Below are positions 11,893-51,789 of a stretch of DNA of 64,000 nucleotides, in pieces (within the stretch, counting starts at the first letter, position 1; each line of letters starts with the position of its first letter). Below the pieces are notes generated by a model. That model was not told the DNA's origin. It saw only the letters and a list, made by a program, of their open reading frames with translations, and made no database searches. The DNA is taken from contig NC_043009.1 in NCBI RefSeq assembly GCF_006345805.1, positions 19,034,001 through 19,098,000 on the forward strand, in the 5' to 3' direction. The position numbers were made by a program, and so were the translations under genes. The stretch comes from Octopus sinensis (taxonomy: Eukaryota).

Positions 11893-11975
11893 GGATTATA
11901 ATGCTTGTCTGCTGAATAAAAACGAAGGTGCATGCACGACTACGGAACGAGATACACTGATGCCAACTAACTGCC
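11893..11975 (+). CDS. Exon B1 (83 nt, phase 2 to 1) of an unidentified Cys-rich modular protein gene: DYNACLLNKNEGACTTTERDTLMPTNC
   Basis: Acceptor ttctttctcttgatAG, donor C|GTAAGT; open only in the frame that continues into the next exon. Confidence 0.75.
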
Positions 11976-12069
11976 GTAAGTACCTATTCTTACCAAGTTC
12001 TGTTTATCACAATTGATTTGTAATTCTTATTGATCCAATCCTTTCATTTTCTTAAAGACAGCTATATAA

Positions 12070-12530
12070 GCGCAGGCGTGGATGTGCGGTTGGCTGTATG
12101 GTAAGAAGCTTGTTTTACAACCATATGATTCCGGGTTCAGTCCCACTGCATGGCACTTTGGACAAGTGTCTCCTACTATAACCACGGATCAACCAAAGCC
12201 TTGTAAAAGGATTTGGTAGACGGAAACTGAAAGAAGCCTGTCGTATATATATGTGTGTATGTATATATGTATGTGTATATATTTATGTGTGTGTATCTTT
12301 GTTTCTGTCTTTGTCCCTTCACCATCGCTTGACAACCGATGTTGGTGTGTTTACATCCCCGTAAGTTAGCAGTTCGGCAAAAGAGACCGATGGAATAATT
12401 ATTCTTTGTAAGCCTAGAGGCTTACAAAGAATAAAGTACTGGGGTCGATTTCTTCGACTAAAAACCCTTTAAGGTGGTTCTCCAGCATGGCCGCAATCAA
12501 ATGACTGAAACACGAATTGAAGAATAAAAT
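12070..12530 (+). mobile_element. tRNA-derived SINE, family A (full length, internal microsatellite)
   Basis: A-box-like TGGCTGTATGGTAAG, B-box GGTTCAGTCCC; further copies at 14556, 44152, 52703, 54222, 56244, 61815. Confidence 0.9.
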
Positions 12531-12804
12531 GAAAAAATAAAACAATATGATTCAACATATACTATATAATTCTATGTTCTACCCATAATTCTGTCCTTGT
12601 GATTTAAGATCGTAATACTTGTCGGTGCGTTGGTATTTCAAAAAACGGCGAAAAGTATTTTATTCTCTTCTGATCTACTGTTGTTAGTATTTGTATTGTA
12701 AGTCTGTATATATGTTATCATACAGTTATTATTATACTATGAGCCTTCCATAGTAGCTTTCTCTCCTTCACTTACAAAGCATTTCTGCTTTATTTACAAA
12801 TATT

Positions 12805-13140
12805 CTGGGGGAGGGCAGTCGATTAAATCGACCCCAGTACGCAACTGGTACTTAATTTATCGACCCCAAAAGAATGAAAGCAAAGTCGAACGCGGCGGAA
12901 TTTGAACTCAGAAAGTAAAGACAGACGAAATATCTATTTCTTTACTACCCACAAGGGGCTAAACACAGAGGAGGCAAACAAGACAGACAGACGGATTAAG
13001 TCGATTATATCAACCCCAGTGCGTAACTGGTATTTAATTTATCGACCCCGAAAGGATGAAAGGCAAAGTCGACCTCGGCGAAATTTGAACTCAGAACGTA
13101 ACTGCAGACGAAATACCTCTAAGCATTTCGCCCGGTGTAG
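12805..13140 (-). mobile_element. Two abutting tRNA-derived SINE family B fragments
   Basis: GAGTTCAAATT B-box, GGGGTCGATAAATTAAGTACCAGTT core; copies at 32306, 35038, 44753, 48918. Confidence 0.88.
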
Positions 13141-13304
13141 TATAAAACAGTTCAAGAATATATTCATTAAATTTGGCTGAAAATGACGGATGAGCGTTTG
13201 GCTCAATTGGAATCGCAAAGGAGCTGTGTTAGCATTGATTTGTGGATTCGATTCTGGATAAGGTTAGCTCATCCTTTTTCGGTCATTTGTATTTAAAAAT
13301 TGTC

Positions 13305-13516
13305 GGAAGGTCTTACGTAATGGATGCATTTCTTAATATATATTACGCTGATCTGAAACGTACATATAATTGGTTTCAAAATATCACTGGTTTGAATTCA
13401 TTCTTACAAATTGTAAAAATGAATTCAAACCAAACAGTGATATTTTGAAAGCAATTATGCGTACGTTTTAGGTCGGCGTAATATATAAGAAATGCATCCA
13501 TTTCGTAAGACCTTCC
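13305..13516. repeat. ~212-bp imperfect palindrome (MITE-like hairpin)
   Basis: GGAAGGTCTTACG..GGATGCATTTCTTA...GGTTTGAATTCATT / AATGAATTCAAACC...TAAGAAATGCATCC..CGTAAGACCTTCC. Confidence 0.85.
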
Positions 13517-13710
13517 TCAATTAAAACATTCCAAAATATGAAACAGCCGATGGAAATATTTCAATATATATGGTCACAGCGGTAAATTGGCTACTAAGAA
13601 TGAATATGTATGGAGAGGGGGGAGTGAGATAGGAAGAGAGAGGGAGAGAAGAGTAACAGTAACAGGAGTAAGAGCACGAAGAGGAGAGAGAGAGACGAAA
13701 GGAGGGAAGA

Positions 13711-13741
<31 letters not shown>

Positions 13742-14435
13742 GAGGTAGTGGGGAAAGAAAGAAAGGAAGATATACGAGTGGATTCTATTGAAAGGAATGA
13801 GATGGCTGTACCTGTATGTTTGCATACAAAATCAATGAAAACGAACAAAGAGTAGAGAATTAAGGTCATGAATTTGGGGCGAAGACGGGGAAGTAATAAA
13901 CCAGATATTAGGGTGTTGTTAAGAGTTTTAGTAGTGAATGGAATAGGTAGTATATAGCTTCCATCTTCAATCCAGTATTAAGACAACTGAATATGAAGAC
14001 ATGCACTGGATGGCCAAAATATCGTTCTTACCTCATCTTGCTCCCTGCACTACAGAATGCACTGCTGCAGCCGCCTTCCCATTCGTTGAACCATGGAGGC
14101 TTCTTCGCCAGACTCCGCCGAACCCAATCTTCACATGCATTGGTAAGCAAGCCCCAATTTGCCAATTAACCCATAGCTGGGGCCCTAACAGGTATTATTA
14201 CTACGGGTCAGAGTAGACTGGGAGTAGTAGTACCTACATACCTACCTGCATACATACATACTCGCACACACACACAGATATACATACATACATACATACA
14301 TACATACATACATACATACATACATACATACATACATACATACATACACACATACACACATGCACACAAGCTTGAAGACCGTATAATTGACACGAAGCGC
14401 AGCCTCTCTTGGACACAAGACCACGACATCACATC

Positions 14436-14555
14436 ACACTTTGAAGGTTATGCATTTGCAATCTAGGAACAGGAGATTGCCACAAAGTATCTTGCGAACA
14501 AGAGAGACAGTGATGCTGTTGTAATCCCAAGGTGCAACCGCATGTGTAGGCTATG
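14436..14555 (+). mobile_element. Small R4/Dong fragment
   Basis: EGYAFAI*EQEIATKYL...CNRMCRLC. Confidence 0.6.
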
Positions 14556-14869
14556 TCGGTCTTTTGCCGAACCACTAAGTTAAAGGGACGTAGCAAACCA
14601 GCATTGGTTGTCAGACGATGATGGGAGGACAAACACAAACACACAAACGTATACACACACACACACAAATACATACATATGTATATATATATACGACGGG
14701 CTTCTTTCAGTTAGGTGTCTACCAAATCCACTCACAAGGCTTTGGTCAGCCCGAGGTTATAGAAGAAGACACTTGCCCAAGGTGCCACGCAGTGAGACTG
14801 AACCCGGAACCATGTGGCTGGTAAGCAAGATTTTACCACACAGCCACTATACACAGCCATTCCTACGCC
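14556..14869 (-). mobile_element. SINE family A (5' two-thirds)
   Basis: Similarity to 12070-12530 and 56244-56662. Confidence 0.88.
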
Positions 14870-15249
14870 TACATATACACATCTACATATACATATGTGT
14901 ATGAGTATGTAAGTGTGTGTGTATGTGCTTGTGTGCGTGTGTGCGCGCGCGTATGTTCCTTATGCATTCGAGAAATTAGTTGCTGATTTTGACGTATGGA
15001 GTATCAAAAGATTCAGCAATCTTTCGCCTACCAAATAAACTTTATTTTCATTTACATATTTGCATTTCAAAAATTTAACACTATAATATTTCTATAAGTT
15101 TACTATCGTAAGCGACATTTTATGCCACCACCACCACCACCACCACCACCAGCACGACGTTACATATTCTATATGCGTGTGTATGGGTCTGTGAATGAAT
15201 CTGTGTTTGCGCGTCCGTAACAGATTATTCAAATATATGTGTCGACCTG

Positions 15250-18200
15250 TAACAGATAAGAAAAAAGAAAAACAGCAGTCAAGCCCCAAACCATGCTATG
15301 GGTGAGGAGAAATACATTTTAAAAGAAACTGTCCTTTTAAAAATCTTAAATGTTTTGGATTTGGAAAAATCGGACATAAGAATTCACATTGTTGGGTGAG
15401 CCAAAAAAGTTGGAATGAAAAAGTTCGAGAAAAAATGTATTGCCAACACAAATGCAAAGCGAGGCATAAAAAAGAAACTTTGTCTCCATAAAAATAAATA
15501 ATGCGAATACCAGACTGCTGTTGGACATAGGTAGTGATATCACAATAATTAACGATGACTCATGAAGAAAAATAGGAAAACTTACATTGAAAAAACTTCG
15601 AAAATTGCGCAAGGTATTTTAGGGAAACGATTGCGATTTTGGGGCGAAAATGATAAGTGAGGTGACATTCCGTAGAAAAATTTTGGAAGCCAAAGTTTTT
15701 GTATTAAAAAATACGACAGGCTTATTTGGCACAGACTGGATGGAACCTCCCATAAATATTTTTTGTTATAATGTAAACGGTTCTTACGCCAGGTTCTTAC
15801 GTCAGAGGTTTTAAAAAAGTAAATTAAAAAAGATTTTTCCTGTTGTTTTTTTCTGAAGAATTAGGTAGGTGCACCAAGACAAATTTCAAGTGAAAGAAAA
15901 CGCTGTACAGGTATTTAAACCGAAGCGAGCTGTACCTTTCGTAGCGTTGAATCAAGTCAACGGGGAATTGGATAGACTTGAAAAGTTTGGAGTTATAGAA
16001 AAAAACTGATTATCCAGAATGGGCATCACCAACTGCTTATGTAAAGAAAAAAAGAAAATACGAGTATGCGTTGACTTTTCAACAGGCTTGAACGAATGTT
16101 TGATGACATACAATTATCCATTACCATGTTCAGAGGAAATTTTTTGAGAAATGGAGGACAATTTTTTTCAAAGTTGGACTTTTCGGAGGCCTATTTACAG
16201 TTACATGTCGAGGAGGAATGTTCGAAATTATTAACGATAAACACCCGTAAAGGTTATATAAATTTGGGATAAAGGTATTTTTCAACAGGTGATGGACATT
16301 GTGCTTGTGGATACGGATTTCGCTATAGATTACTTGGATGACATACTTATAAAAAGTGAGTCTCAAGGCCAGCATGAGGAACATTTTAAAAAGATCTTTG
16401 AAAGAATAAATGAGTATGTATTTAAACTTAGCGAGGAAAGATGCGAACTTTCCATGCCAAAAATAAAGTATCTAGGGCAAGTTATCGATAAAAATGGTCG
16501 CAGGCCAGATCCTTCAGGATCGAAGAAATTAAAAATGTTTTAACATCAGAAGTGTCATTATCGCACTTTGATCCAAATTTAAAAACGGTAGTAGCACCAG
16601 ATGCTAGCGAAAGTGGTATAGGAGTGGTAATTTTATACAAGTATGAAAATGGTAGCCTAAAATCCATCGCTCATACTTCACGTTTATTGTTGGCGGCTGA
16701 AAAAAAAACTAGTCAAATTGAGAAGGCGGTGTTAGCCATTATTTTTGCCGTGAAAAAATTTCACAAATTCATACATGGAAGGAAATTCAGTCTGCAGCCA
16801 GATCACCGCCTCTCTTTGTCAATTTACGGATCGAAAATGGGTATCCCCACACATACAGCCAATCGATTGCAGCGCTGGGGGACGATCCTGCTAAATTATG
16901 ACTTTAAGATGGAATTTCTACCATCGAAAAAACTGGGACATGCGGATGGTCTGTCAAGATTGATACCTAAATACAATGAACTGTTAAAGGACACATTAAT
17001 AGCGGCATTAAAAGCTGAAATCGAAATAAAAAGAAATATACTCTGCAACGTAGTATGTGAACTACCTGTCACTTTAGAAGATATAAAAAATCAAAGCAGA
17101 GAAGGATATGTTCATAATAAAAATGAAAAACATAGTGAAGTCAGAAACAAATATAACAACTCATGTAGCCGAGCGTAACACAGTTTCGAAATGGTATTCG
17201 ATATGTGATGACGTACTTATGTACGCCCAGAGGTAATACATGTTTCTTTGCAAAATTGTATGCTTAAAGAATTTCACATGGGACACCCAGGAATCGCGAG
17301 AATGAAAGCACTGATGAGGAGCGACGTCTACTGGCCGAATATGGATCAGGATATTGAAAAGTTGGCGAAAGCCTGCAGGGATTGTGCCCTGACAGCAAAA
17401 GCACCACCTATAAAAATTCAGCCTTGGCCCGAGACTGACGTACCCTGGTCCAGATTACACACAGACTTCCCAGGACGGTTAAATGGAGGGTATTATCTAA
17501 TAGCTGTGGATAGTTACACGAAATGCCCAGAAATATGTAAATGTATGAAACCAACCTCTAAAGTAATAAATGGAATTTCTGGACGAATTTCTGCTCGATA
17601 TAGCCTCCCAGACACTATAGTGTTTGATAACGGAATACAGTTCACGTCGAAGGAATTTTAAAACTTTTGCAAAATGCATGCAGTGGAGCATATTACTGCT
17701 TCGCCATACCATCCGAGATCGAATGGACTAGCGGAACGTTTTGTAGATACGTTTAAAAGGGCGCTGAAAAAATCTAAAAATGAGCTACCAGCTGATATTG
17801 CATTGATGCAATTCTTAAGTGTCTACCGAATAACACCTAAGCCCAACACCAGATATGTCGTCGACTGAATTCATGTTCCCCAGGAAAGTCAGGTCAGTGT
17901 TTGACAAATTACTACCGGAAAGAAAAGAAAAAAGGAGAGAAACACTGAAAATAAGATAAAATACTTCAAAATCGGTGACAAGGTGGTTTTTTAAAATATA
18001 CAGAAATGGAAAGAAAAGTTGGGAAGAATGTATAATATGTAAACGTTTATGAAAAATAGTGTACATAGTAAAAGGTCATACGTGGGAACGCAAAAGACAT
18101 TTAAACCAACTGAAAAAAGGTCTACGGAAGAAAGAATAAAACATAATGAACCAATGGAACTTCTTTATGACAGTTTTGACATTCGAACCAACGAGTGCAT

Positions 18201-18622
18201 CGACTAGGAAAAGAAAACAAACAGAATTTATACAAGTAGCGTCAAAACGACAAAAACATTCCAATTTCTTTTCGGGGAATTAGTAAAAAAAAGGGGGAGA
18301 GGTGGTAATAAATATATGATAAATAAAAGAAAAATATTGACTTCCAAGGAAATTCAAGCTCAAAAAGGGGAGGTGTTGTGGTGAAATCCTGATACCTCTG
18401 TGGGATAGCAAGTGAACTGTCCTAAATCTTATAAAGGCGCATGCGTACTGACAGTGCGATGTACAGTGTCATGTGTGCATTTGCATTTACGAAGGCAGTC
18501 ACAGAAGTCGTTGAGAAGAGATATAAATGTGTTACGTTTGTTACTGATTTAGTTTTGGTAGTGTTATCACACTGTTACAGTGTAGTCTATATCCCTACGC
18601 ACGAATATAAGAGATATTAACA
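15250..18622 (+). mobile_element. 5'-truncated, degenerate Ty3/Gypsy LTR retrotransposon (gag knuckles, PR, RT, RNase H, IN, PPT, 3' LTR)
   Basis: Gag CYG*GEIHFKRNC..CFGFGKIGHKNSHC (~15294-15392); protease LDIGSD (15521); RT YLDDILI; RNase H APDASESGIG, QPDHR; integrase HMGHPG, WSRLHTDF, DNGIQFTS, YHPRSNGLAERFV; PR-RT-RH-IN order; many stops and frameshifts. Confidence 0.93.
18374..18622 (+). repeat. 3' LTR of the Gypsy element (249 bp)
   Basis: TGTT...AACA termini directly after the polypurine tract AAAAAGGGGAGG; no matching 5' LTR in the window. Confidence 0.7.
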
Positions 18623-18664
18623 TTCAACTCAAGACTTTAGCTACATGAAATTACATGCGATCAA

Positions 18665-19055
18665 ATGATAGTTTCTCTGAGGAATCTTATGAATAAAGTA
18701 TTTCCTAATTTATCTGTCAATTACACTGATATAAACTGGTTGTGTGAAAAAACTATACTGGTTCCAACTGATGAACTTCTTCAAAAGTTAACAGATACAT
18801 CAGAAATGACTTTCCGATCAACTGACAACAGTCGATCAAGATTAGGTTATTCAATACCCTGTTGAATTTCTGATCACACGTAAACCCACTGGAATACCAC
18901 TGCATAACTCGACACTAAAACTGGAGGCTCCTATTATGTTGCTTAGGGATTTTGACCCATCTCACCTGTGTAATGGAACTTGCTTAATTGTCCATCAGGC
19001 AACAATCATAACAGGTAGTCAGAAAGGAGAAAATGTCTTTATTCCAAAAATTTCT
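18665..19055 (+). pseudogene. Helitron PIF1-like helicase fragment
   Basis: KVFPNLSVNYTDINWLCEKTILVPT; EFL..KPTGIPLHNSTLKLEAPIMLLRDFDPSHLCNGT; ATIITGSQKGENVFIPKI. Confidence 0.8.
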
Positions 19056-19325
19056 TTACGTTTGATTTAGGGTGTAACGACCCATACATTGTCATCAACT
19101 TTCTCGTCCTTCTATCCAGTGTTGATATTTCCTTCTTAGTCCATTTGAGGATGGACGCACTATATCTGACCACAGCAACTCCCCAGATATTCATTGAAGT
19201 AATCAAAGTTTTGGCATTGAGGTTGGATTTCAACACCATCTTCACCCTTTTTTGATACGCCTCGCTGACCTTGACTTTTATTTCTCTTCGTAGAATGTCA
19301 TCCAGATCCAAAATCCCTAAATAAA
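19050..19325 (-). mobile_element. R4/Dong RT thumb fragment
   Basis: YQKRVKMVLKSNLN...AVVRYS...LDRRTRKLMTMYGSLHPKS. Confidence 0.8.
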
Positions 19326-19448
19326 CATACCAGAAGAACTATGCCTCAGAGAAATCCAAAAGATTGTGCTGACAAGTACTGCCCACATCCTTAGATAAAG
19401 CCCATCAGTTTAAATGTTTGTGTTGTATTACATGGTGATATTTCGCTA

Positions 19449-19551
19449 CTGCCCCCTCCCCAAGCTTTCAACCATACTGTAACATCGCTTACCCTTCACT
19501 CGCCCTAGGACGCTGGGTGAGTTTCGGTAAGCGATTATAACAAAGGGGCAG
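19449..19551 (+). other. Long GC-richer hairpin, pre-miRNA-like geometry
   Basis: ATCGCTTACC/GGTAAGCGAT (10 bp) plus ACTCGCCC/GGGTGAGT (8 bp, one G-U), 9-nt loop, basal CTGCCCC/GGGGCAG pairing. Confidence 0.4.
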
Positions 19552-19742
19552 CTTAAAAGTAAATAACAATAATCACTGCATCGACCAGACCAAACTATGG
19601 AATGTTGTCATACGCCGCTGGTTTCGAAAGTGCTTCCTCGCATTAGGCCGGCCAACTCTTTCTCTGAACGAGTCGCTAGTCTGTCGCACGGTTGCCCATT
19701 TACAGCTGAGCGTTCTCCCGCCCCATTTATATTCCATTCATT

Positions 19743-20340
19743 TTAATCCTTATCTTTCATCAATAATTTTAACAAATCGGTGAATACTTCATTGTTCACA
19801 ACTTCTAACCAACGTTCCACTAGTTTTCCAATGCATTGACCATAGAAATCCATGGGTCTTGATTCGGAGAATTCATCGAGCCATGTTTTCAGCTCCATTC
19901 CGTTGTTGGAGGAAAAGCCTCGCAGACTGTTGGACAGCAATCGAAAAAATATATATATAATCTGAAAATGCTATATCAGGAAAATATTATGGGTGTGGTA
20001 GAACTTACCAGTCGAGATTTTGAATAGTATTTTTAATCAAATTAACTATGCGTGATCGAGCATTGTCGTATCGAAGTTGCACGCCCTGTCGTCGATGGGG
20101 TCATTTCAGTTGAATTACTTCAGTATTCATTGAGTAAATGTGACGAATGACTAACGCAAAGTCTACAAGTATGAAAATCATAGTGCCTTCTCCGTACAAA
20201 TATCTTGGAGCTATTTTGGCAGCTTTGAAACCTTGATTGAAAGTGAAGATAAAAAGGTGTTGAAAATACTCTTTTTTGGTACTTGGCTCTCCATCGTCAT
20301 ATGTCTGAAAAAAAAGGTAAAATTTATTTAAATTAGCCAA
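19743..20340 (-). mobile_element. Internally deleted mariner remnant
   Basis: KEYFQHLFIFTFNQGFKAA (N-terminus), RYDNARSH (second Asp), WLDEF..FY..IGKLVERW (C-terminus). Confidence 0.75.
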
Positions 20341-20522
20341 TAAAAAGTTATAGAGGAAGAATAGAGTTACACAAAAAGAAACACTATCTTTTTAATCATA
20401 TATTTATCTATTTTTTGGTTGAGTAGTTCTATTATTTCGATAAAATATTTTTCGTGTTAATTCAAATAACATTGTAAAAGTGATCGAATTTATCTGACAA
20501 CCCAACATATTTTATTTTACAG

Positions 20523-20589
20523 GTTGTTATGTGGTATGCAATGAACAGTTCCGAAATACTCTCAGCAGTCGACAAGCCCATTTTTGCTA
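20523..20589 (+). CDS. Exon A2 (67 nt, phase 1 to 2): (R)CYVVCNEQFRNTLSSRQAHFC
   Basis: Acceptor tattttattttacAG, donor TA|GTAAGT; begins NN-TGT and ends TGC-NN like the other A exons. Confidence 0.8.
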
Positions 20590-21173
20590 GTAAGTAATAA
20601 CATATTCCAGCTATAAGATAGGTAATGAAGTTTCTCCACAAAGTCGACACGTACCATTGTGGGAACAAATGTGTCGATTTTTATGAATATCATCAACGAC
20701 TGTTGTTGGCTGCAAATCTTACACTGTTAGACTTGCTTGTCAGGTTTTGTTGATATGTTACATAATGAACGATATTCCTAAATATACTCACATACCATAA
20801 AGATAGGTTCCAACTCAAAATATTTCATTCGAAGACAAATGTCAACTATTGTTATTATTAGTCAGAATTCAGAAATATGTTTATGTTTATATTTTTAGAG
20901 TCTCTGACAATCGACTCATTGAAACAGAAAACAATTGTATTATTAACAATGAAAATGCGTAGACATGTCCACCTACTCATACAACTGTTTATTTCAGAAA
21001 CACAGATACACACGCACACATGTACAGAGACACACAGGGATCCCCCCACACACACACACTCACACACATATCAAACAGAAAGCAATAATGTGTTATATAC
21101 ATTTATTGAGCATCAAAATAATACATTCCTTGCGCACGTCCTCTTGTTTGTTATTCTGTTTACATGAATTGAC

Positions 21174-21257
<84 letters not shown>

Positions 21258-21444
21258 ATTATAATTTTCTTTCGAAACACATAGACAGTGTAGAAGTGCT
21301 CAAAAGAAAAAGTTGGAATCTCTACTACTCTCTTCTTTGTCCTAATGGCCATATTCTCCCATGTGTATTCCCATAAGTGTACCTATTTATGTATGTAGGT
21401 ATGTATCTATGTAAGGCCGGATATTTTATATTCCTGTGTATCTA

Positions 21445-21475
21445 CAACCTTGGCCAAAAGTATTAGGCCACCCAA
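21445..21475 (+). mobile_element. Tc1-like terminal inverted repeat fragment
   Basis: TA|CAACCTTGGCCAAAAGTATTAGGCCACC; partner TIR not found. Confidence 0.35.
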
Positions 21476-21964
21476 TGTTTTGGGGTTCTGCTATCTCAAT
21501 GTTAATGAAACTCTTGTTCGTGGTAGATTATGGTATGTTTCACAATATACATCTGAAAATCACTCCTCTGCTAAAATCCTATTTCTAACTCTCTTTCTCC
21601 ATATCACTAACTTCAACTAACTTTTTAACCACATAATAAATACCTCACGTCTCTCTCTCTTTTTTTCTAATCACGAGAAGCGTTACCGACGGGCTAAGTA
21701 ACGGAATAACAATTGGTGTTAGTAATATTGTTACCGTGGGTTAGACTCAAAAATGTTGCTACTGTAAATTACTGTTTATAATATTGTAATTGTGGCTTAT
21801 GTTACTGTGGATTTCATCAACAATGTTGTTTTCCCCCCTACAATTCACTTCCGAACTGCACCAGTTTGTAGGCAATTGTGTAATTGCAGCCAAATTCGTT
21901 TGTGTGTCGACCTAAACCTCTCGAGCCAGTAGTGCATGCTAATTTCATTAGCAAGTATTTCGTC

Positions 21965-41142: not shown

Positions 41143-41146
<4 letters not shown>

Positions 41147-41360: not shown

Positions 41361-41577
41361 TAAACCTTCCTCGAATGGGGCTTTTACATGCTGAAATCTA
41401 CTTGGTGAAATTAATGATTACTCCAAATTAATTGATTTCACCCTATATTATTATTGATATATATGTCTATGTGTGTGTGGCTGTGTGTATGTGTATATGT
41501 ATGCGCACGCATATGCGTATATGAATACATTTACGGATGCGCGTGGGCTTACATGTATATATATATATATATATATA

Positions 41578-41932
41578 TGTAGGTCCCGGGTTGAGTCGGG
41601 GTTAACCACAGTAAATAAGGTACTCAATACATAGCAGAGTAAATTAATTTATTATATAGAAGGAGCTTCTACAGGACTAGAACTGTTTCATTCAAAAGAA
41701 ATCATCAGGAAGCTAGTAGACAAGAGTTGTTTTGGCATTTATACATTTAGGCAGGTTTAAAAGGGTGGTGGTGGGGGACTTTTTTGGGGGTAGGCATGGC
41801 GCAAAACTGTCATTATTAGGGGAGTGGTCAAAGGAATCGGTGGTAAAGTAGATAAAAGAGTAAATAAAAGAATAAAAGAATAAATAGAAAAATAGAGTTT
41901 TAGGTAAGTAAGGAGACTCTCACTTGTACATC

Positions 41933-41935
<3 letters not shown>
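41578..41935 (-). mobile_element. Solo PLE-pLTR-like insertion in (TA)n
   Basis: ~360 bp flanked by TA repeats; contains a well-formed hammerhead. Confidence 0.55.
41664..41714 (-). ncRNA. Well-formed 51-nt type I hammerhead ribozyme
   Basis: AGCUUC-CUGAUGA-U-UUC-UUUU-GAA-U-GAA-ACAG-UUCUAGUC-CUGU-A-GAAGCU: 6-bp stem I, 4-bp stem III, GUA site. Confidence 0.75.
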
Positions 41936-41969
<34 letters not shown>

Positions 41970-43037
41970 CCACATATTCACATACATCTATATATATATA
42001 CATACATACCCACATATACATACATATATATACACATACATACATATACATATATATATACATACATATACATACACATACCCATGTACACACACACAAA
42101 TACACATATACATACATATATATACACACATGTATACACACTCGCACATATATATACATACACACATATACACATGCATATACATGCACACACATACACA
42201 CACATTTTTATTCCCTTATTTTAATTTTATTATTACTACTTTTGTTTATATCTTTATTTTTATCTTGATCGCGGTCAGCCGGTCTCAAGGGATGATCTAA
42301 AGAGTCCATTTATCTATCTACTCACTGATACGAACGCAAACACTCACTCACGCCCACACACTCACACGTACATTCATACCCATACACACACGCACGTGTA
42401 CTATTCATACACACATACATCTACATACATTCACGTATATTCACATACGTACACGTACCTACTGATTCATATCTACACGCATACGCATACATACCTCAAT
42501 ACACCCACAGAAGACTAGTCCATACATATACACTAATAAATATATATACACATATACACATACACATACATACACATACATACATATACATACACATATA
42601 CATATATATACATATACATATACATATACATACACATATACATTTATACATATATACACATACACACATATATATATATATGCGTACACATACACACACA
42701 CACACGCGCGCATCTATATATACACATAAGTACATACATGCATAAATGTATACATATGTCTATACATATGCATACACATCCACACACACACGCGCCTCCT
42801 TATGTTCATAAATACATACATGCATACAGGCATATACATATATACATACATGCACACTCAAATAATAATAATAAATATATATACGTGCAGTTACCCATTA
42901 TACAGACGGATACATACATCTAAACCTACCCATATATACCTATTTACACATATGTATATATACATACATACATACACACATAACTTTACATACCTACATA
43001 TACATAAACACACAAGCGTACACATATATATACATAT

Positions 43038-43100
<63 letters not shown>

Positions 43101-43197
43101 TATACATACATACATATATACAGATACATACACACACATATATATACATTTACACGCACATTTTTACACATATATATACACATACACATACATACAC

Positions 43198-43252
<55 letters not shown>

Positions 43253-43535
43253 AGCACATACATGCATAAATGTATACATATGTTTATACAAATGCATACA
43301 CATATACACACTCACGCGCCTCCTTATATACATAAATACATACATGCATACAAACGCATACTCATGTAATAAATAATGAATAATAAATAATAGATATATA
43401 TACACATGCAGTTACCCTTTATACAGACGGAAACATTCATATAAACATACACGTATATACCTAATTACACATATGTATATATACATACATACATGCACAT
43501 ACACATAACTCTACATACTTACATATACATATACT

Positions 43536-43577
<42 letters not shown>

Positions 43578-43700
43578 TGTATGTACATGTATATATATAT
43601 ATATGTGTGTGTGCGTGTGTGTTTGTGTGTGTATGTATGTATGTATGCATATGTACACATGTATACGTACATGTGCGCGAGTATACGTATGTCATTATAC
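41930..43700. repeat. Compound TA/CA/TACA microsatellite field with a diverged ~525-bp tandem duplication
   Basis: CATGCATAAATGTATACATATG...CACGCGCCTCCTTAT...GCAGTTACCC..TACAGACGGA occurs at ~42736 and ~43261. Confidence 0.85.
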
Positions 43701-44151
43701 TTTCCTTCCTCCTCTCTGATTCCTGTCTTCACACTAACAATCACATACGTCTATTTATAAAAATTTGACACCCTTGTATTCTTCCCTCCAATTTTACTAC
43801 TAAAACTACTACTCATTTTGGTATCACCCCACCCATACCTTTTCTCTACCCATCCCTTAATGCAGCCCTATCATATCACCCCTACTCACATATCTCACAC
43901 TTATTCAGTCCTTACCTTCTCATCTCTTCCTATCCCTCTCCCATTCCTCTCCCATCCTCCCTTTACATTATCTTGACCACCAACTCCTTTTCTCGCTTCT
44001 TTCTCCCTTTCTTCACTTTTTTCACACTTTACACTTCTTTCTCTTTCTTCTTTTTTCTCTTTTTTCTCTCTTTCTTCCTCTCATATTCTCTTCTTGTTCT
44101 CATTTCCACGAACACACACACACACACACATATCTGCACAGACATACTCTT

Positions 44152-44305
44152 TTACTCTTTTACTTGTTTCAGTCATTTGACTGTGGCCATGCTGGAGCAC
44201 TGCCTTTAGTCGAGCAAATCGACCCCAGGACTTAATCTTTGTAAGCTTAGTACTTATTTTATCGGTCTCTTTTGCCGAACAGCTAAGTTACTGGGACATA
44301 AACAA
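44152..44305 (-). mobile_element. SINE family A, 3' part
   Basis: TACTTGTTTCAGTCATTTGACTG...GACCCCAGGAC. Confidence 0.88.
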
Positions 44306-44517
44306 ACCACATAATTTACATTTATTAATTGTGCGTATTAATACATACCCTACAGTCTGAGTTTGCATGCTAGGTTCCTCAGCTTTCGCAGCAAATTGCA
44401 TTGAAAACTCAATTGCGATAAGTTTTGTTTCTGTGTACACATTCATACGCAACTAATTGATAAATTGCACAAGGCATATCATTAAATTTAATGTTAAGAT
44501 ACCATATATAAAGAGTG

Positions 44518-44595
<78 letters not shown>

Positions 44596-44752
44596 TGTAC
44601 TACTACTAAACACGTTTGCTTAGCTAATAGATTAATAAATAATCATAAACTGAAACTTTAACATCATACCGTGATAAATTATTTCTGCAATCAGTTCATG
44701 TTAATTTTATTATCATTTCATCAGTTATATGTAAGTAATATTTACTTACATT

Positions 44753-44950
44753 AAGGCGGCGAGTTGACAGAATCGTTAGCACGCTAGACAAAATTTCGTC
44801 CGTCTTTTTGCTCTGAGCTCAAATTCCGCCGAAGGCGACTTTGCCTTTCATCCGTTCGGGGTCGATAAAATAAGTACCTGCTTTGCACTGGAGTCGATGT
44901 AATCGACTTACTTCCGAAATTGCTGGCCTTATGCCAAAATTTGAAATCTA
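44753..44950 (+). mobile_element. SINE family B variant
   Basis: GGCGGCGAGTTGACAGAATCGTTAG head, shared core and tail. Confidence 0.85.
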
Positions 44951-44959
44951 TAGGAAGGA

Positions 44960-46400
44960 GTTCCAACCATGTTTCGTGGTTCGCTAAACTCAACAACCCC
45001 TTTATAGGACCCAGTGGCTAAGGACATCAACAGGAGGAACCACGTCTGGTTTCGGCCCCTAGTCGTCTACCGTTTTCCGAGGTGGCGCCCCCCCCCACTT
45101 TTGGAGGTGTCTTCAGCTCTGGCATTGAGGACTTTTTTTTTGTTCTTTGGTTGCGTCGTCTTCCATACAGTGTCAACAAATGTCAGCGGGCGAATGACCA
45201 CCCTGCCAAATTTCCCTTTAAATAATAGCCGGTAAGCTCTAGCAGCCAGCGCCAGCTGTCACCGCGTCGATCGACTGTCATGTGACGCAGTCTACTGACC
45301 AATGGAGAGGAAGAGTACGTAGTTTTAGCCCACGCCCTCTCTAGACCTACCTTTTTCCTTTCAATGAAGTCTCAAACCCCCAATGCTAGGTGGTAATACT
45401 CGACAGTCCACTCCTGTTCCCCGCACTCTTCGATTAATTTCTCATACCTTCTCTCCTTCCGTTGCTTCGCATTAGCGATGTTCTCGTCCCACAGCTCTAT
45501 CAGTTCTAGCAAAATTCAAATTTCTCAGTCTGTATTCCATAGGAATGTTGTTAGGTTGTTGTTATGAGTAGACATTAATAATCTTTCCAAATTCGCGGCC
45601 AGTACCTCCCAGTACCTCTTCCATCTTTCGTCTGTCTCGTATACTTTTTTGAAGGCCTGGTCTTATGTATTTTCCCCTCCTTCCGCATGTTTCCACTTTT
45701 AGGTACTCACCCCTATTATATCCCTCGATCTTCTCCTTGAGTGTTGAGCATACGACACCGAGGACTTGGTTGTGACTCCATGTGTCTCTGTTTAGTGCTA
45801 GCCTGCAGTTTGACAGAACATGCCTTACCGTCACTTTATCTTTGCATCTACATTCATCAGTCGATTGTAGGTTCTACCGGACTAAATTGGTCGGTGAAGG
45901 CAATATATCGAAGGTGGACTTGACCAGGAAGGATGTTCTTTCTTGTTCCCAAGTCCAAAGTTCCTCCCATCTCAAGCACTGTCCCTCTTGACTACATTAC
46001 ATCAAATGTACATTTCGCCTTTCTTTTTCCTCCTTCCTCACTTCGTGTATCTCTGCCTCTTTCAATTCTTTTACACTATTCATGCACAATGGTTTGAAAT
46101 TTTGCAGCCCTAGACAAGCTCTTGTTTTTTGCATCGCTCCGACTATATCGTCATGTCTTAGCTTTCCGATTGCCCTGTTTACTGCTTCTTCCGCTTTCTG
46201 TTCGTATCTCCGGAGGGCTTTCTCGGATGTTCTGATCTTTCGAATACCTTAGCATCATTACTTTCCTGCAAGATAGTCTTCGACGATTGATGCAATCGGT
46301 AGTTGCAGCACGGGTTTTCCATATAGTGCAGTTGTATTCAGCGGTTTTGGAAAACTAAGCCATTTTCTGATAAACACACTGCATCTTTGTTCTAACCTTT
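44960..46400 (-). mobile_element. HERO-like (restriction-like endonuclease) non-LTR element, 3' part with deletions
   Basis: IRKWLSFP, QCLRWE, SFLVKSTFDILPSP, CRC..VRHVLSNC..HNQVL; 3' UTR similar to 54765-55100. Confidence 0.75.
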
Positions 46401-47440
46401 CTACTCTACTCGATTATTTATAACTACATATTGTTTGGATTATCGTAAGTTGTACGTTTGCCACATATAATTACCTTCAATTTTTACATACTGAAATATC
46501 ACAACCAACGAAAAGACTCACTAAGGATTGACATTTTTTTTAAATGCCAGGAGCGAAATGCAAGCGTATAAGATCCTTAAGAAGGCACATTTGTGCAGAC
46601 AAAAATAATGTATCTTTAATTTCACAAATTCATAAGTATGACAATTTATGTTAAATTATTGTTTTGGTCTAAAGGTTCAAATTGCTTCTTTATAAAGATG
46701 TTTTTTGGAACTTCACCAATGGACAGTTCCAAATTTGAATGTGAACGAAGTTGTACCTTCAGATGAAGAGGTTCCCCACCCTTCATCAACGTCATCGTTG
46801 AACCTATTATAAATAACTAAATCCTCTTCAAATTATACCATAACATCTAAACACACACACACACATACAGACACACACATTGGATAAATGTCGCTTTAGA
46901 TTCACGATGCCCGAAGAGAAAAGTACAGTATTGTCACTACATACGAGATATATGCAATTCGAGAATACAAAGAGGTTGCAGTACTGAGTGAAACAACTTC
47001 ATTTCACATTCACTTCACCAGAATACCTTCGAATGGGTCTATTCCATCTATCTATCTATCTTCGTTTACCCTGGTCTCCAGTTTGAGAATACTTTCTCCT
47101 ACCAGTTTCGGAAAAACTTTAGAGTCATGGGTACTAATCTTTCATCGTAAGAGTTAAGAAATATCTGTCTTCTTTCCTCTATCTGATTAGCTAACGCCCT
47201 ATATCTATCTGTCTAAACATTTATCTATGTAACTCTATCGGCAGAGTATTAAAGCTTAAACCAACAAGGTAATTATTGACCGTTATATCATTTTGATATC
47301 AAATCATTTTCTTATATCATTCTTTCACATTACTGTAAACCGCCTGTAAGTGTACTGCCACAATGAAAGATAAATTATCCAATTTGTGATTCGCTTTTAA
47401 AATGTCATGTATAAACTGAAAAAAAATATGTATATTTCAG

Positions 47441-47586
47441 CAAATCCTTGAGTTGCTTATCAGGGGGACCGGTAGCAAATGAATATGCAGGTTGTGCATC
47501 TGCTAAAGCAGTACGGAAAGTGATGGAAGAGAAGAATTATCAAATAACCAATCCAAAAGGGACCTGGATATTGAACAAAGAATGCC
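47441..47586 (+). CDS. Exon B3 (146 nt, phase 2 to 1): (T)KSLSCLSGGPVANEYAGCASAKAVRKVMEEKNYQITNPKGTWILNKEC
   Basis: Acceptor atatgtatatttcAG, donor C|GTAAGA; 48 open codons. Confidence 0.8.
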
Positions 47587-48917
47587 GTAAGAATTTTTTC
47601 CTTATCTAAAATAATTATTTCAAGATTTAGAATTTATTATTTGATAAAAAGCTTTTTAAAGTAGATAGTAAGGCCTTCTAGCAAAACGGTCATGGCAATG
47701 TCTCTTTCAATGTAGTCTTCAATATGTTCTTGTAATGTCTTCTCTGTCCTCACTAATGGCATATCTTTTGTCTTCTTCCATGCTGTAGTTACTCATTTCT
47801 TGAATGATTTTCTGCACTATCTTTTATATTGTTCATTCATTCTATTCTTCAATACTCTCTTCGTAATATTTTCTTCAATGTCTTCCATCTGAATTTTACT
47901 TTCCAGCCTCTTCATCACAACGTCACTGTAATCGATGTATTCTTTAATCTATTCGTTAATGTTCATATTTTTGTGTTTTCGTCAGCACTTTCTTTAGTAT
48001 CATCACCAAAGACCCCTTGAAGGTTTTCTTCTATCCCTTATCCAATGCCTCCTTTATTGCTTTTCATTGTCTTCGGTGTCTCTTTTGATATCTTCTCCTA
48101 TGTCTCCAATGTCTTCTACAAGTTTCTTCGGTCTATTATTAACTGGCTTAACCGTTTCCTTCATTGTCTTATCCAACGCCATCTTCAATGACTCTGCTGT
48201 CTTCTATATCTTGTACAATGTTTTACATTATTATCAAGTTCTACTTCACTGTCGTCAATCGTGTATTTTTAATGCTATTTTTATTGTTTTATCAATGTGT
48301 TTTTAATGTTATCCTCACTGTGTTTCCAATGTCTTCTCTGCACTCTTTTTCTTATACTTTCTCATCATATTTATCTTCATCATTGCCAAATAGTATTCGA
48401 TGCCTTCTTTAATATCTTATGTCAGTTTAACATTAGATCCAAGACTTCTTCGATGTTTTGAACAATATCCTCTTCAATGTATACAGCAAAATTTTTTCAG
48501 TGTCCCTTTTTCAATCTCAGAATTATGGTCAATGTGCTTTTCAGTGGAATCTTCATTTTCTTCCTTGATGTTTTCACAATCTGCCTCAATGTCGTGTAAC
48601 GTTTTCTTCAATGCCATTTCACCGTATTCTTCATTGCCTTCGTCACTGCTTTTTTCATTGACTTATCTACTTAATTCACTGCCTTTTTCAATACCATTTT
48701 CAATACTTTGCTCAATGTCTTCCTCAATATCTTTCCACAACCTTCTTGACTGCCTTGTTCAATGTTTCCAATGTTAGCTTTAGTATCATTTTTAAGGATA
48801 TATTTTCAAATATTTTCGTTTTCGTGACAATATTTCTGTAATGCTTGCTTTAATCTCTTATCGTTCCCTCAATTACTTTTACAATATACTCCTCAGTTTT
48901 TCCTTCAATATTTTTTA

Positions 48918-49370
48918 TAAGGCGGGCGAAATGCTTAGCGGTATTTCGTCAATAAATTTTCTATTGTCTCTCCTTGTATTTTTCTATATCTTTTCTAATG
49001 TTCCATTCATTATCTTCGTAAATACTTTTGTCTTTTAATGTCTACATTTTTCAAACAAAATTAAATAAATGACTTAACTCCCTGTAAATGGCAATTTCAG
49101 GAAATCGTATTTATATACGATTTCCTGAAATTGCCATTTACAGGGAGTTAAGTCATTTATTTAATTTTGTTTGAAAATGTAGACATTAAAAGACAAAAGT
49201 ATTTACGAAGATAATGAATGGAACATTAGAAAAGATATAGAAAAATACAAGGAGAGACAATAGAGTTCAAATTCCGCTGAGGTCGACTTTGCCTTTCATT
49301 AAGTACCAGTTGCGTATTAGGGTCGATCTAATCGACTGGACCCCTCCCCTAAAATTTCGGGCCTTGTGAA
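48918..49370 (+). mobile_element. SINE family B split by a 305-bp palindrome
   Basis: Head ...GGGCGAAATGCTTAGCGGTATTTCGTC ends at 48950; GAGTTCAAATTCCG resumes at 49263. Confidence 0.8.
48960..49264. repeat. Near-perfect 305-bp palindrome (4-nt loop, one homopolymer indel)
   Basis: Centre CGTAT-TTAT-ATACG at 49106-49119; the arm also occurs at 50026-50189. Confidence 0.92.
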
Positions 49371-51033
49371 GAAAAGAAAAGAAAATTTTTTATGTAATCA
49401 TGGAAGAAAATTTTAAATCCCTGAAAATCTTTCTCATTCTTTTCTACATCTTCCCCAAAGTATTATTAAGTATAATATTCAATGACCTCTCCGATTTTAT
49501 TCTCGACTGTTCTTCTTCAAAGTCGTCTTCAATGTGTAGCATAGTTTCTTCTTCAACAGTGTCTTCATTCTATTCTTAACTCTCTTCGTCACTGTTTTCT
49601 GCAATAGTTATTACAATGTCCTTGGCACCGTCTTTGTGGAACGAGTTTTCAATGTTTTGATCAATGTCCTTCCCCGTTATTTCCCAAATGACTTAATATC
49701 GTTCTCCATATTCTAATGTATTCTCTATTTTCTGTAATCTTCCGATGCCATATTCAATTTCGTCGATGTATTCTTGGGTGTATTTCCACTCGTTAACAGA
49801 TACCTTTGTCTGATACATTGTGTTGTATATATTTAGTTAACTCTCGCTACGTTTTATCATCAACCACAATGTAAATACGTCTCGACAATCTCTGCAAGGG
49901 ATAAAAACAGGGAGATCGTTCCCACCAGCTTTCGTCCTATTTGGGTCAACTTAGCAAGAACATGTCTCTGTCCACTACAAAATTTTACATCGAATCGCTA
50001 GAAACAAGTAATTCTCTAAACAGGAATATACGATTTCCTGAAATTGTCATTTACAGGGAGTTAAGTCATTTATTTAATTTTGTTTGAAAAATGTAGACAT
50101 TAAAAGACAAAAGTATTTACGAAGATAATGAATGGAACATTAGAAAAGATATAGAAAAATACAAGGAGGAGACAATAGAAAATGTATTGAAAGTTCATTA
50201 AACAATAAATTAGCGAGAATTATGAAGAAGTCACTGAAAGCATTGAAGAAAAATGTGATGATGACGTTAAAGTGAATTGAAGAGTATACTGAAGATATCG
50301 GATAAAATATTAAATATGAGAGTGAAGAAGATCGTAAATGAAACTGCAAAATTAGATGTCAGATGTGTTCGCAGATTCTTCGTGGTAGTAAATGGAGATT
50401 GAATTATTAATGTAAATCAGTTGAATTTTCTTTGAATTTGAGAAGTCAGTGCTTCTGATGCCTAAATGTACAATATCTCTGTGGACACAGACTGGTGTGT
50501 ACGCAATTCCTGAAGTATTGTTCCAAATAGAATCGATATCTGTTAGAGAGTTCTTCATCTTCTACACATGGGAAATTTTTTGGCAACAGTGGATTCAAAT
50601 AGCACAGATTATACGTGGTTGTACATTAGCATGATTTATTTGGTTTATTCAATATATTCTCCATTGTTTTCTTCAAAGGTTTTTTTCGATATCTTTTCCA
50701 CTGCCTTTTACAATGTTTTCTTCTCTGCATTATTTAAAATTCTTTATTACCTCTTTCAATATCTTCTTTCATGATCTTTTTGAAATACCTTTTTCAGTTT
50801 CCCCTTGAACGTTTTCTTCCATATTCCTTTTATCTCATCTATTTCTCTTCCATTATTTCGTCAATATCATCTGCACTGAATCTTTGAAGGCATTCTTAAA
50901 AGTATTCATATAATTATACAATGTCGCTTATTAGCAATTTGTTCTACGCTTTCTTCTTCAAAGTCATTACCTGCCAGCATGTAATGAAGGCCGAGTAAGT
51001 AGTGGAAATATGTGTGTACGTGTGTTTGTGTGT

Positions 51034-51074
<41 letters not shown>

Positions 51075-51189
51075 TGTGTGTGTGTATGTATGTATGTATG
51101 TATGTATGTATGTATGTATGTATGTATGTATGTATGTATATATATATATATATATATATATAATATGTGTGTGTGTATATATGTATATT

Positions 51190-51350
51190 TTAATATATAA
51201 AACCCGGTCTGTTTGTCTGTGAGCTTATAACTCGAGTATTGTTCATCCTATCGCGCTGACATTTTAAGCATGGGTATATGAGAGCTCGGGGCGTTTCGTA
51301 ATCTAAAAAGATTTTCAAAGCATTAGACGGAGTAACAAAATCGATAGAGA
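51190..51350 (+). mobile_element. Probable non-autonomous Helitron/DINE-1-like 5' fragment
   Basis: ATATATAAAA..TCTGTTTGTCTGT..ATAACTCGAG..ATCGCGCTGACATTTT resembles the 5' core of such elements. Confidence 0.45.
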
Positions 51351-51737
51351 ATCGGAATAATTCTTTGCATCCCCTCGTTTCCTGTTATCCTTTCCCGACG
51401 TCAAGGAAATAAATATACATTTGAGTACAAGAGTTAATTACGTCAATATACATTTTGCTCTAAATAAGTGGTTTGTGACTATGTTACAAAATGCATTACA
51501 TAAAAAAAGGTATCATCTCAATATTTTTAACGATGTTGCTCACCCTGTGTATGCTAGCACTACATAAGAAAATCACCCGCATATACACTCACACCCGCTT
51601 TTACATTTTGTCACGTACATAGACATAAGCACACCCACTTACTCATATAGATGCATTGCCATATAAACAAAATATTTTCACGTTTTCTTTTGCTTATTGT
51701 CAATTACGACCCCGTTCCTTCGTTCTATATCTTTCAG

Positions 51738-51789
51738 GTTGTGTAAATATTTGTGCTAAAGAACAGCTTGAATACTGGCCAACCTGTGG
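51738..51789 (+). CDS. Exon A4 (52 nt, phase 1 to 2): (R)CVNICAKEQLEYWPTC(G)
   Basis: Acceptor ttctatatctttcAG, donor GG|GTGAGT; same NN-TGT...TGY-NN layout as A2 and A3. Confidence 0.8.

What the first reader, a model, noticed from the sequence alone, without database searches (positions are those of the whole stretch)
11893..51789. Hidden host gene encoding tandem 6-Cys modules, each built from a pair of tiny exons
SEEN: six exons (11893-11975, 20523-20589, 24154-24245, 30034-30097, 47441-47586, 51738-51789; 504 nt) all have a pyrimidine-rich AG acceptor and a GTAAG or GTGAG donor. Their phases alternate 2-1, 1-2, 2-1, 1-2, 2-1, 1-2 and join into one stop-free frame: DYNACLLNKNEGACTTTERDTLMPTNCRCYVVCNEQFRNTLSSRQAHFCYYRGELEKCMRSNPFCLGVSTYLLNDFEAKCPCKVENCLSSRSEIHPRNLSCTKSLSCLSGGPVANEYAGCASAKAVRKVMEEKNYQITNPKGTWILNKECRCVNICAKEQLEYWPTCG. 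All three B exons end TGY-C|GTAAG and all three A exons start NN-TGT and end TGY-NN|GT, so every module junction reads C-x-C. The module is C-x3/4-C-x10/15-C-x5/8-C-x6/12-C-x12/29-C-x. INFERENCE: the protein grew by repeated duplication of a two-exon cassette, with only the Cys scaffold retained while the loops diverged. This suggests a secreted or cell-surface disulfide-rich protein, possibly lineage-restricted. I do not recognise the family. Start, signal peptide and last exon were not identified. No exon appears in the ORF track.
Basis: partly seen in the sequence, partly recalled or inferred. Interest (0 to 1): 0.85.

Follow-up and report, generated by a model that had tools for sequence, protein, structure and literature searches.

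The report
Uncharacterised octopus cysteine-rich surface protein gene
The six tiny exons are real and form the middle of an already annotated but unstudied octopus gene, which encodes a probably lipid-anchored cell-surface protein built from five six-cysteine repeats that match no known protein family.

Summary
All six exons sit at the stated coordinates with the stated splice sites and phases. They join into a stop-free 168-aa peptide with 19 Cys.

The peptide is identical to residues 38-205 of Octopus sinensis XP_029644475.1 ("uncharacterized protein LOC115218684", 322 aa, gene span about 113 kb). It differs at two residues from an O. vulgaris model and is about 97% identical to an O. bimaculoides model. 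So the gene is annotated, not hidden, but it is uncharacterised.

Against O. bimaculoides, four exons keep length and splice sites. dN/dS is 0.14, and dS roughly equals intron divergence.

A 39%-identical homologue lies on an intronless 1.1-kb Logan contig, most simply a transcript. It keeps every mature Cys except the final Octopus-only pair, and almost every loop length.

The full protein has a signal peptide, five tandem six-Cys modules and a GPI-signal-like C-terminal tail. Each module is an A+B exon pair flanked by phase-1 introns with an internal phase-2 intron.

No Pfam, PDB-sequence or GFRalpha profile match was found. The AlphaFold model is all-helical but low confidence (pLDDT 48), and Foldseek found nothing.

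Best reading: a lineage-restricted, GPI-tethered, disulfide-rich surface protein of unknown ligand. Interest is modest.

The parts
11893..11975 (+). Exon B1, second half of module 1. Encodes residues 38-65 of XP_029644475.1 (DYNAC...PTNC). Phase 2 in, phase 1 out.
   Evidence: Acceptor ctcttgatag, donor GTAAGT.
20523..20589 (+). Exon A2, first half of module 2 (residues 66-87, CYVVC...HFC).
   Evidence: Acceptor ttattttacag, donor GTAAGT.
24154..24245 (+). Exon B2, second half of module 2 (residues 88-118).
   Evidence: Orthologous exon at L011 976-1067 has the same length and splice sites, with 2 synonymous changes.
30034..30097 (+). Exon A3, first half of module 3 (residues 119-139).
   Evidence: Orthologous exon at L011 4877-4940 has the same length and splice sites.
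47441..47586 (+). Exon B3, second half of module 3 (residues 140-188), the longest exon.
   Evidence: Orthologous exon at L011 26923-27068. The same exon boundaries occur in genomic contigs of a distant species, L006-L010. An in-frame alternative acceptor lies at 47453.
51738..51789 (+). Exon A4, first half of module 4 (residues 189-205).
   Evidence: Orthologous exon at L011 31705-31756 with 1 synonymous change. Donor GTGAGT.
11976..51737 (+). Five introns of 3.6-17.3 kb, filled with degraded transposons and microsatellites. The same gene continues beyond both window ends: residues 1-37 lie upstream and residues 206-322 downstream.
   Evidence: tblastn of the full-length protein finds only residues 38-205 in the window. 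The gene spans 112.7 kb in GCA_006345805.1.

Best explanation
The six exons are the central part of a genuine protein-coding Octopus gene. In O. sinensis it is LOC115218684 (322 aa, about 12 small coding exons spread over about 113 kb), and the window matches that model exactly.

The product enters the secretory pathway through an N-terminal signal peptide. Cleavage is inferred after CYA or CNS, which leaves an even Cys count. The mature chain is five tandem six-Cys modules with the pattern C-x3/4-C-x10-18-C-x5-8-C-x5-12-C-x7-29-C. Consecutive modules are joined by a single residue, which produces the C-x-C motif. The chain ends in a short stretch of small residues followed by a hydrophobic tail, as expected of a GPI-attachment signal.

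Each module is encoded by an A+B exon pair. The pair is flanked by phase-1 introns and split by a phase-2 intron. It is therefore a symmetric 1-1 cassette that can duplicate in tandem without breaking the frame, and that is how the repeat array most likely arose.

Inferred mechanism: about three disulfides per module lock small, mainly helical units into a rigid stalk or array displayed on the outer leaflet of the plasma membrane. There the protein acts as a binding protein, co-receptor or adhesion component for a still unknown partner. It could be released in soluble form by anchor cleavage or alternative 3' processing.

Shown: exon structure, conservation, purifying selection, the Cys scaffold, and hydrophobic N- and C-termini.

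Inferred: disulfide bonding, helical fold, GPI anchoring, and binding function.
For: - Exact identity of the spliced peptide to residues 38-205 of XP_029644475.1. Two substitutions against O. vulgaris CAI9731646.1. The same junctions appear in two O. bimaculoides models.
- The gene spans 112.7 kb. The window holds only residues 38-205.
- O. bimaculoides locus L011 is colinear with the window. BLAST-aligned intron blocks are about 85-91% identical. Global alignments of the 300-bp flanks range from 67 to 95%. Exons are 96.6% identical without indels, and all splice sites are kept.
- 4 nonsynonymous against 7 synonymous changes: dN/dS 0.14, binomial p=0.002, dS 0.10.
- The distant homologue P0133 (39% identity) sits on an intronless 1107-nt contig. 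The same B3 exon boundaries are seen in that lineage's genomic contigs.
- Cys spacings are nearly identical between the two homologues. Mature Cys counts are 30 and 32. Both have hydrophobic N- and C-termini. DSGS or SGKSG precedes the tail.
- Downstream exons B4, A5 and B5 in L011 repeat the phase pattern.
- The AlphaFold model is entirely helical where structured.
Against: - No transcript from Octopus itself was seen. Only gene models support it there.
- GPI anchoring rests on sequence features alone, because no predictor was available.
- The O. vulgaris model ends without the hydrophobic tail. A soluble isoform or an annotation error is therefore possible.
- The AlphaFold model has low confidence (mean pLDDT 47.9), so the helical fold is tentative.
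- No ligand, expression site or phenotype is known.
- The A+B structural register is argued from Cys parity and intron symmetry. It has not been measured.
Confidence: 0.72

Rival explanations
1. The protein is a very divergent member of the GFRalpha/GAS1 superfamily, meaning GPI-anchored, all-helical, Cys-rich co-receptors. Its modules would be cut down to six of the ten canonical cysteines.
For: - Same overall architecture: signal peptide, Cys-rich helical modules, GPI-like tail, about 320 aa like GAS1.
- The stretch C-x(11-29)-C-x-C-x(3-4)-C-x(10-18)-C resembles C6..C7-x-C8-x4-C9-x11-C10 of rat GFRalpha1 D2 and D3. That GFRalpha1 sequence was verified against PDB entry 2v5e.
- GFRalpha D1 and C. 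elegans GAS1 also lack some of the ten Cys (alignment; PMC4349606).
Against: - No Pfam GDNF (PF02351) hit at E<=10 for the fragment or for the full-length homologues.
- hhalign of the modules or the full alignment against GFRalpha D2/D3 gives probability 0.1-0.5%.
- A profile search of PDB sequences finds nothing.
- The defining 10-Cys pattern is absent: there are five C-x-C motifs in 30 Cys (PMC3527400).
- Modules are 43-69 aa, against 80-95 aa for GFRalpha domains.
Confidence: 0.1
2. The main product is a soluble secreted protein rather than a membrane-tethered one. The hydrophobic C-terminus would be either a mis-annotated exon or used only in a minor isoform.
For: - The O. vulgaris model ends ...ILDEYDKYLNKIYHNSDKALL without a hydrophobic tail.
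- A truncated copy of the start of the last exon, with an early stop, lies in the A5-B5 intron of O. bimaculoides.
Against: - The hydrophobic tail is present in the O. sinensis and O. bimaculoides models. It is also present in the 39%-identical homologue encoded on an intronless contig. Conservation at that distance argues that it is functional.
- The truncated exon copy is out of frame with its upstream neighbour A5.
Confidence: 0.13
3. The exons are chance open segments, a decaying pseudogene, or transposon-derived sequence. No functional protein would be made.
For: The window is transposon-rich. No Octopus transcript was seen directly.
Against: - Chance is excluded by the scaffold and simulation tests.
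- The exons are unique within the window.
- The reading frame and all splice sites are intact in two species, with dN/dS 0.14.
- A distant homologue lies on an intronless contig with an intact ORF and a conserved Cys scaffold.
Confidence: 0.02

Closest known systems
GFRalpha / GAS1 family (Pfam GDNF, PF02351)
   Same: Signal peptide, tandem disulfide-rich domains predicted helical, C-terminal GPI signal, and a C-x-C motif followed by C-x(3-4)-C and a distal Cys. Overall size is like GAS1.
   Different: Six rather than ten Cys per unit, and units about half as long. No HMM or profile-profile similarity was found. There are five units instead of two to four.
uPAR / Ly6 (LU domain) proteins
   Same: GPI-anchored, Cys-rich tandem domains. 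In uPAR each domain is encoded by an exon pair (from my own knowledge, not tested here).
   Different: LU domains are beta-rich three-finger folds with 8-10 Cys and a terminal CCxxxxCN motif. That motif is absent here. The model is all-helical. There is no Pfam UPAR_LY6 hit.
RECK N-terminal cysteine-knot repeats
   Same: A GPI-anchored protein beginning with five tandem six-Cys repeats (from my own knowledge).
   Different: RECK repeats start with CC and follow a different spacing, recalled as CC-x8-C-x3-C-x~22-C-x~10-C. RECK is about 970 aa and carries Kazal and EGF modules. No sequence comparison was run because no verified RECK sequence was available.
Class 1-1 exon-shuffled extracellular modules (EGF, sushi and similar)
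   Same: The repeating unit is bounded by phase-1 introns. This allows in-frame tandem duplication.
   Different: The unit carries an extra internal phase-2 intron. The Cys pattern matches none of these domains, and there are no Pfam hits.

Membership tests
GFRalpha/GAS1 (PF02351) | Ten conserved Cys per domain (C1..C10 with a single C7-x-C8) | tested here: not met
   Five C-x-C motifs among 30-32 mature Cys, which gives six Cys per unit. The 10-Cys definition comes from PMC3527400 and PMC4349606.
GFRalpha/GAS1 (PF02351) | Significant match to the family HMM or to GFRalpha domain profiles | tested here: not met
   No Pfam hit at E<=10. hhalign probability 0.1-0.5%. No hit in a PDB sequence-profile search.
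GFRalpha/GAS1 (PF02351) | All-alpha five-helix domain fold | tested here: inconclusive
   The AlphaFold model is helical but has mean pLDDT 47.9. Foldseek against PDB gives no match with E<3.
GFRalpha/GAS1 (PF02351) | Signal peptide plus C-terminal GPI signal | tested here: met
   Hydrophobic N- and C-termini, with small residues before the tail, in both distant homologues. No dedicated predictor was run.
Ly6/uPAR (LU domain) | 8-10 Cys with a C-terminal CCxxxxCN motif, and a three-finger beta fold | tested here: not met
   No CC pair or CN motif in the sequence. No Pfam hit. The model contains no strands (low confidence).
Plasmodium-type 6-Cys (s48/45), EGF, Kazal/follistatin, DUF19/CPG4 | Match to the respective Pfam models | tested here: not met
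   hmmscan of the 168-aa fragment, P0137 and P0133 at E<=10 returned no relevant family.
Annotated Octopus gene LOC115218684 / LOC106879637 | Window exons encode the annotated protein with the same junctions | tested here: met
   The 168-aa join equals residues 38-205 of XP_029644475.1. The locus is colinear with O. bimaculoides CM046613.1.

The most novel reading that the evidence does not exclude
The five modules represent a previously undescribed disulfide-rich all-alpha domain family restricted to cephalopods. It would define a new class of GPI-anchored surface receptor or adhesion protein that arose and expanded by duplication of a two-exon cassette within this lineage.
Probability: 0.35. 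Interest if true: 0.5.

Novelty: new member of a known kind. Interest (0 to 1): 0.3.

Why it matters
The result shows that a tool-free reading of raw sequence reconstructed five splice junctions of a real gene exactly. That is useful as validation of the scan.

Biologically, the gene is one of many annotated but unstudied cephalopod genes. Its product combines a strongly conserved 30-Cys scaffold, very fast-evolving loops and a probable GPI anchor. Those are the properties expected of a surface recognition or co-receptor molecule.

If the domain is truly new and cephalopod-restricted, it would add a lineage-specific extracellular module to the list of cephalopod innovations. It is also a clean example of domain-array growth through a symmetric phase 1-1 exon cassette.

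It does not open a long-standing question. Lineage-specific Cys-rich surface proteins are common.

Tried and rejected
- **Word-index homology search with the 168-aa peptide:** no hit. This was a false negative, because the collection does hold the protein.
- **Spliced peptide in structure prediction and the search of protein representatives:** Only the contiguous exon B3 was submitted.
- **Fold of B3 alone:** uninformative, pLDDT 59.
- **Metagenome scans with B3 and with the family alignment:** nothing.
- **Two homology searches spent on transposon ORFs to find the taxon:** uninformative, with hits of only about 50-70% identity from unnamed ENA or Logan assemblies. Exact look-ups of window ORFs also failed.
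- **Further exons in the window (A1, B4, first or last exon):** none found by tblastn, splice scans or scaffold patterns. This is explained by the full-length protein mapping only to residues 38-205.
- **MAFFT alignment of the modules:** it mis-registers the Cys. A manual Cys-anchored alignment was used instead.
- **Residual similarity between modules beyond Cys:** not significant. Nine of ten tests gave z<1.2 and one gave z=4.1.
- **GFRalpha relationship:** tested and not supported.
- **Foldseek against PDB:** no meaningful match.
- **Literature searches for the gene and run accessions and for octopus GPI-anchored Cys-rich proteins:** nothing relevant.
- **Species of the distant homologue:** Logan runs SRR24189490, ERR12921341 and others could not be identified. 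Their contigs share no nucleotide similarity with Octopus.
Full report
**Observation**

- The exons are 83, 67, 92, 64, 146 and 52 nt long.
- Each is preceded by YAG. Donors are GTAAGT (four times), GTAAGA and GTGAGT.
- Joined, they give the quoted 168-aa peptide in one frame with no stop and 19 Cys. The other two frames carry 12 and 10 stops.
- The B exons end TGY-C|GTAAG.
- The A exons start NN-TGT and end TGY-NN|GT. Every B/A junction therefore reads C-x-C.
- The only soft spot is the weak polypyrimidine tract before exon B3. An in-frame alternative acceptor lies 12 nt downstream at 47453.

**Is it more than chance?**

- With strict splice criteria, the + strand has only about two dozen open AG..GTRAG candidates. 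Four of the six claimed exons are the most Cys-dense of them. The other two narrowly miss the 70% pyrimidine cut-off and appear once it is relaxed.
- A pattern that asks only for AG, the phase, the Cys spacing and GT finds exactly the three A exons on the + strand and none on the - strand. It also finds the three B exons plus one weak extra, against one on the - strand.
- 200 second-order Markov simulations give a mean of 0.66 signature candidates per sequence (acceptor/donor/frame combinations), with a maximum of 5. On the same count the window has 8, from six distinct donors, and these are also phase-compatible in genomic order.
- Cys is 11.3% of the peptide, against 3.8% in other open candidates.
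- The exons are unique within the window. Each is 4-10 points richer in G+C than its flanks.

**What it is**

The first database attempts failed.
- Pfam gave no hit.
- PDB sequences gave only a spurious hit.
- The word-index protein search gave no hit.
I did not work around that.

Submitting only the contiguous 48-aa exon B3 to the exhaustive search returned P0130 at 100% identity. P0130 is a 303-aa protein that contains the whole 168-aa join.

Cluster look-up names the proteins:
- O. vulgaris CAI9731646.1 ("hypothetical predicted protein");
- O. sinensis XP_029644475.1 ("uncharacterized protein LOC115218684", 322 aa);
- O. bimaculoides XP_052828339.1 and XP_014784784.1 (LOC106879637).

The window peptide is a perfect substring of the O. 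sinensis protein, residues 38-205. It differs from O. vulgaris at two residues. The window is therefore most likely O. sinensis.

The gene spans 112.7 kb in GCA_006345805.1. tblastn of the full protein finds only residues 38-205 in the window. This explains why my searches for a first exon, a last exon or further modules found nothing.

**Conservation**

The O. bimaculoides locus (L011, 95.8 kb) is colinear with window 23966-52379. BLAST-aligned intron blocks are about 85-91% identical. Global alignments of the 300-bp exon flanks range from 67 to 95%.

Exons B2, A3, B3 and A4 have identical lengths, conserved splice sites and 12 differences in 354 nt. Across the 117 complete codons these are 7 synonymous and 4 nonsynonymous changes. 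That gives dS 0.10, about the same as intron divergence, and dN/dS 0.14. The deficit of nonsynonymous changes has binomial p=0.002.

A much more distant homologue, P0133, is 313 aa and 39% identical. It is encoded without introns on a 1107-nt contig of a Logan assembly of run SRR24189490. The contig carries flanking non-coding sequence on both sides, so it is most simply an assembled transcript.

Genomic contigs from other runs carry that lineage's exon B3 with the same boundaries, ttttag|C ... TGCC|gtgagc. The species could not be identified. Its DNA shares no detectable nucleotide similarity with Octopus.

**Anatomy of the protein**

- Both homologues have a hydrophobic N-terminus.
- Both have a Cys three residues before a plausible signal-peptidase site (CYA|E, CNS|I).
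- The mature chains carry 32 Cys (Octopus) and 30 Cys (P0133).
- Both have a C-terminal hydrophobic stretch, preceded by DSGS or SGKSG and followed by no cytoplasmic residues. That is the form of a GPI-attachment signal.
- Cys spacings are almost identical between the two 39%-identical proteins: 4,11/10,5,8,12,1,3,15,8,6,14,1,4,13/12,5,12,29,1,3,10,8,5,11,1,3,18,8,5,15/7.
- P0133 is exactly five six-Cys units. Octopus has these five plus a terminal C-x3-C.
- In O. bimaculoides the downstream exons B4, A5 and B5 repeat the phase pattern. The last intron has moved by one codon, so it splits the Cys codon.

An A+B pair is thus flanked by phase-1 introns and split by a phase-2 intron.

A leave-one-module-out HMM test with Cys-fixed shuffles shows no consistent similarity between modules beyond the scaffold. 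Nine of ten tests gave z<1.2. The duplications are therefore old. They predate the split of the two lineages, because the modules correspond one to one.

**Comparison with known families**

- Pfam gives nothing for the fragment or the full-length proteins. The only entry is a spurious dynein hit at E=0.19.
- A profile of the family finds no PDB sequence.
- The AlphaFold model built on the five-sequence alignment is entirely helical where structured. Its confidence is low (mean pLDDT 47.9), and Foldseek against PDB finds nothing better than E=3.

I tested the most attractive lead, the GFRalpha/GAS1 family, because it shares several features:
- a GPI anchor;
- helical Cys-rich domains;
- a C-x-C motif.

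The rat GFRalpha1 D2-D3 sequence I recalled was verified as exact against PDB 2v5e. hhalign of the modules or of the whole family against D2/D3 gives 0.1-0.5% probability. The defining ten-Cys pattern (PMC3527400; PMC4349606) is not met. Membership is therefore not supported. A functional analogy, a GPI-tethered disulfide-rich binding protein, remains reasonable.

uPAR/Ly6 and RECK share architectural themes but not the Cys pattern. The model also contains no beta strands.

**Mechanism**

Shown:
- a conserved spliced gene under purifying selection;
- an invariant Cys scaffold;
- hydrophobic termini.

Inferred:
- secretion;
- about 15 disulfides arranged three per module;
- small helical modules;
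- GPI tethering to the outer membrane leaflet;
- a role as a binding protein, co-receptor or adhesion protein.

The pattern of fast-evolving loops on a fixed scaffold is typical of recognition molecules. Possible soluble forms are suggested by the O. vulgaris model's alternative ending.

**Verdict**

The gene is already annotated as uncharacterised in three Octopus genomes, so it is not hidden. What remains new is the description of the module architecture and the absence of any recognisable family. Restriction to cephalopods is plausible but under-tested, because the only unrestricted homology search could use just one 48-aa exon. Interest is modest.

Noticed in passing
window 3838-5586: Nested, near-perfect (99-100%) inverted repeats with arms of 384, 256, 153 and 135 nt, plus a 546-nt tandem duplication (4463-4762 equals 5009-5308). 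This could be a very young foldback element or an assembly artefact.
   Followed up: partly
window 7914-8327(-), 16552-17661(+), 23500-23862(+), 55327-56157(-), 58177-58551(-): Degraded transposons fill the sequence around the exons: a mariner transposase fragment, Ty3/gypsy RNase H plus integrase, zf-RVT and RVT_1 fragments of non-LTR elements, and a LINE-like ORF. The closest database copies are only 50-70% identical.
   Followed up: partly
window 22504-22623, 22655-23047, 48960-49264, 52373-52641: A (TCT)40 microsatellite produces a poly-Ser ORF. Three 270-400-nt palindromic segments (88-99% self-complementary) lie in or near the gene's introns and may be MITE-like.
   Followed up: no
L011 (O. 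bimaculoides) about 83918-83967: A truncated copy of the start of the last coding exon (..TCFEFCDSDSKLNV, then a stop) lies in the intron between exons A5 and B5. It is out of frame with A5. It is probably a relic of partial duplication rather than an alternative terminal exon.
   Followed up: partly
P0130, P0136 and P0137 gene models: The three Octopus annotations disagree. The O. vulgaris model ends in ...ILDEYDKYLNKIYHNSDKALL without the hydrophobic tail. The O. bimaculoides models lack residues 1-91. At least two of the public models are probably incomplete or read into an intron.
   Followed up: partly
L011 84283-84380 and 94654-94763: The last intron is phase 1 like the other B/A introns but shifted by one codon. 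It splits the Cys codon (T|GT) rather than the x codon of C-x-C, which suggests intron sliding.
   Followed up: no
window 47453: An in-frame alternative acceptor (ccttgag|TTGC) lies 12 nt inside exon B3. Using it would delete four residues (KSLS). The annotated models use 47441.
   Followed up: no
tool behaviour: The word-index protein search returned no hit for the 168-aa peptide. The collection nevertheless holds proteins that contain it at 99-100% identity. Negative results from that tool should not be read as absence.
   Followed up: yes
O. sinensis locus downstream of the gene: The next annotated gene, on the opposite strand about 9 kb past the 3' end, encodes a protein with multiple PAN/Apple domains. 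It is another extracellular Cys-rich protein.
   Followed up: no
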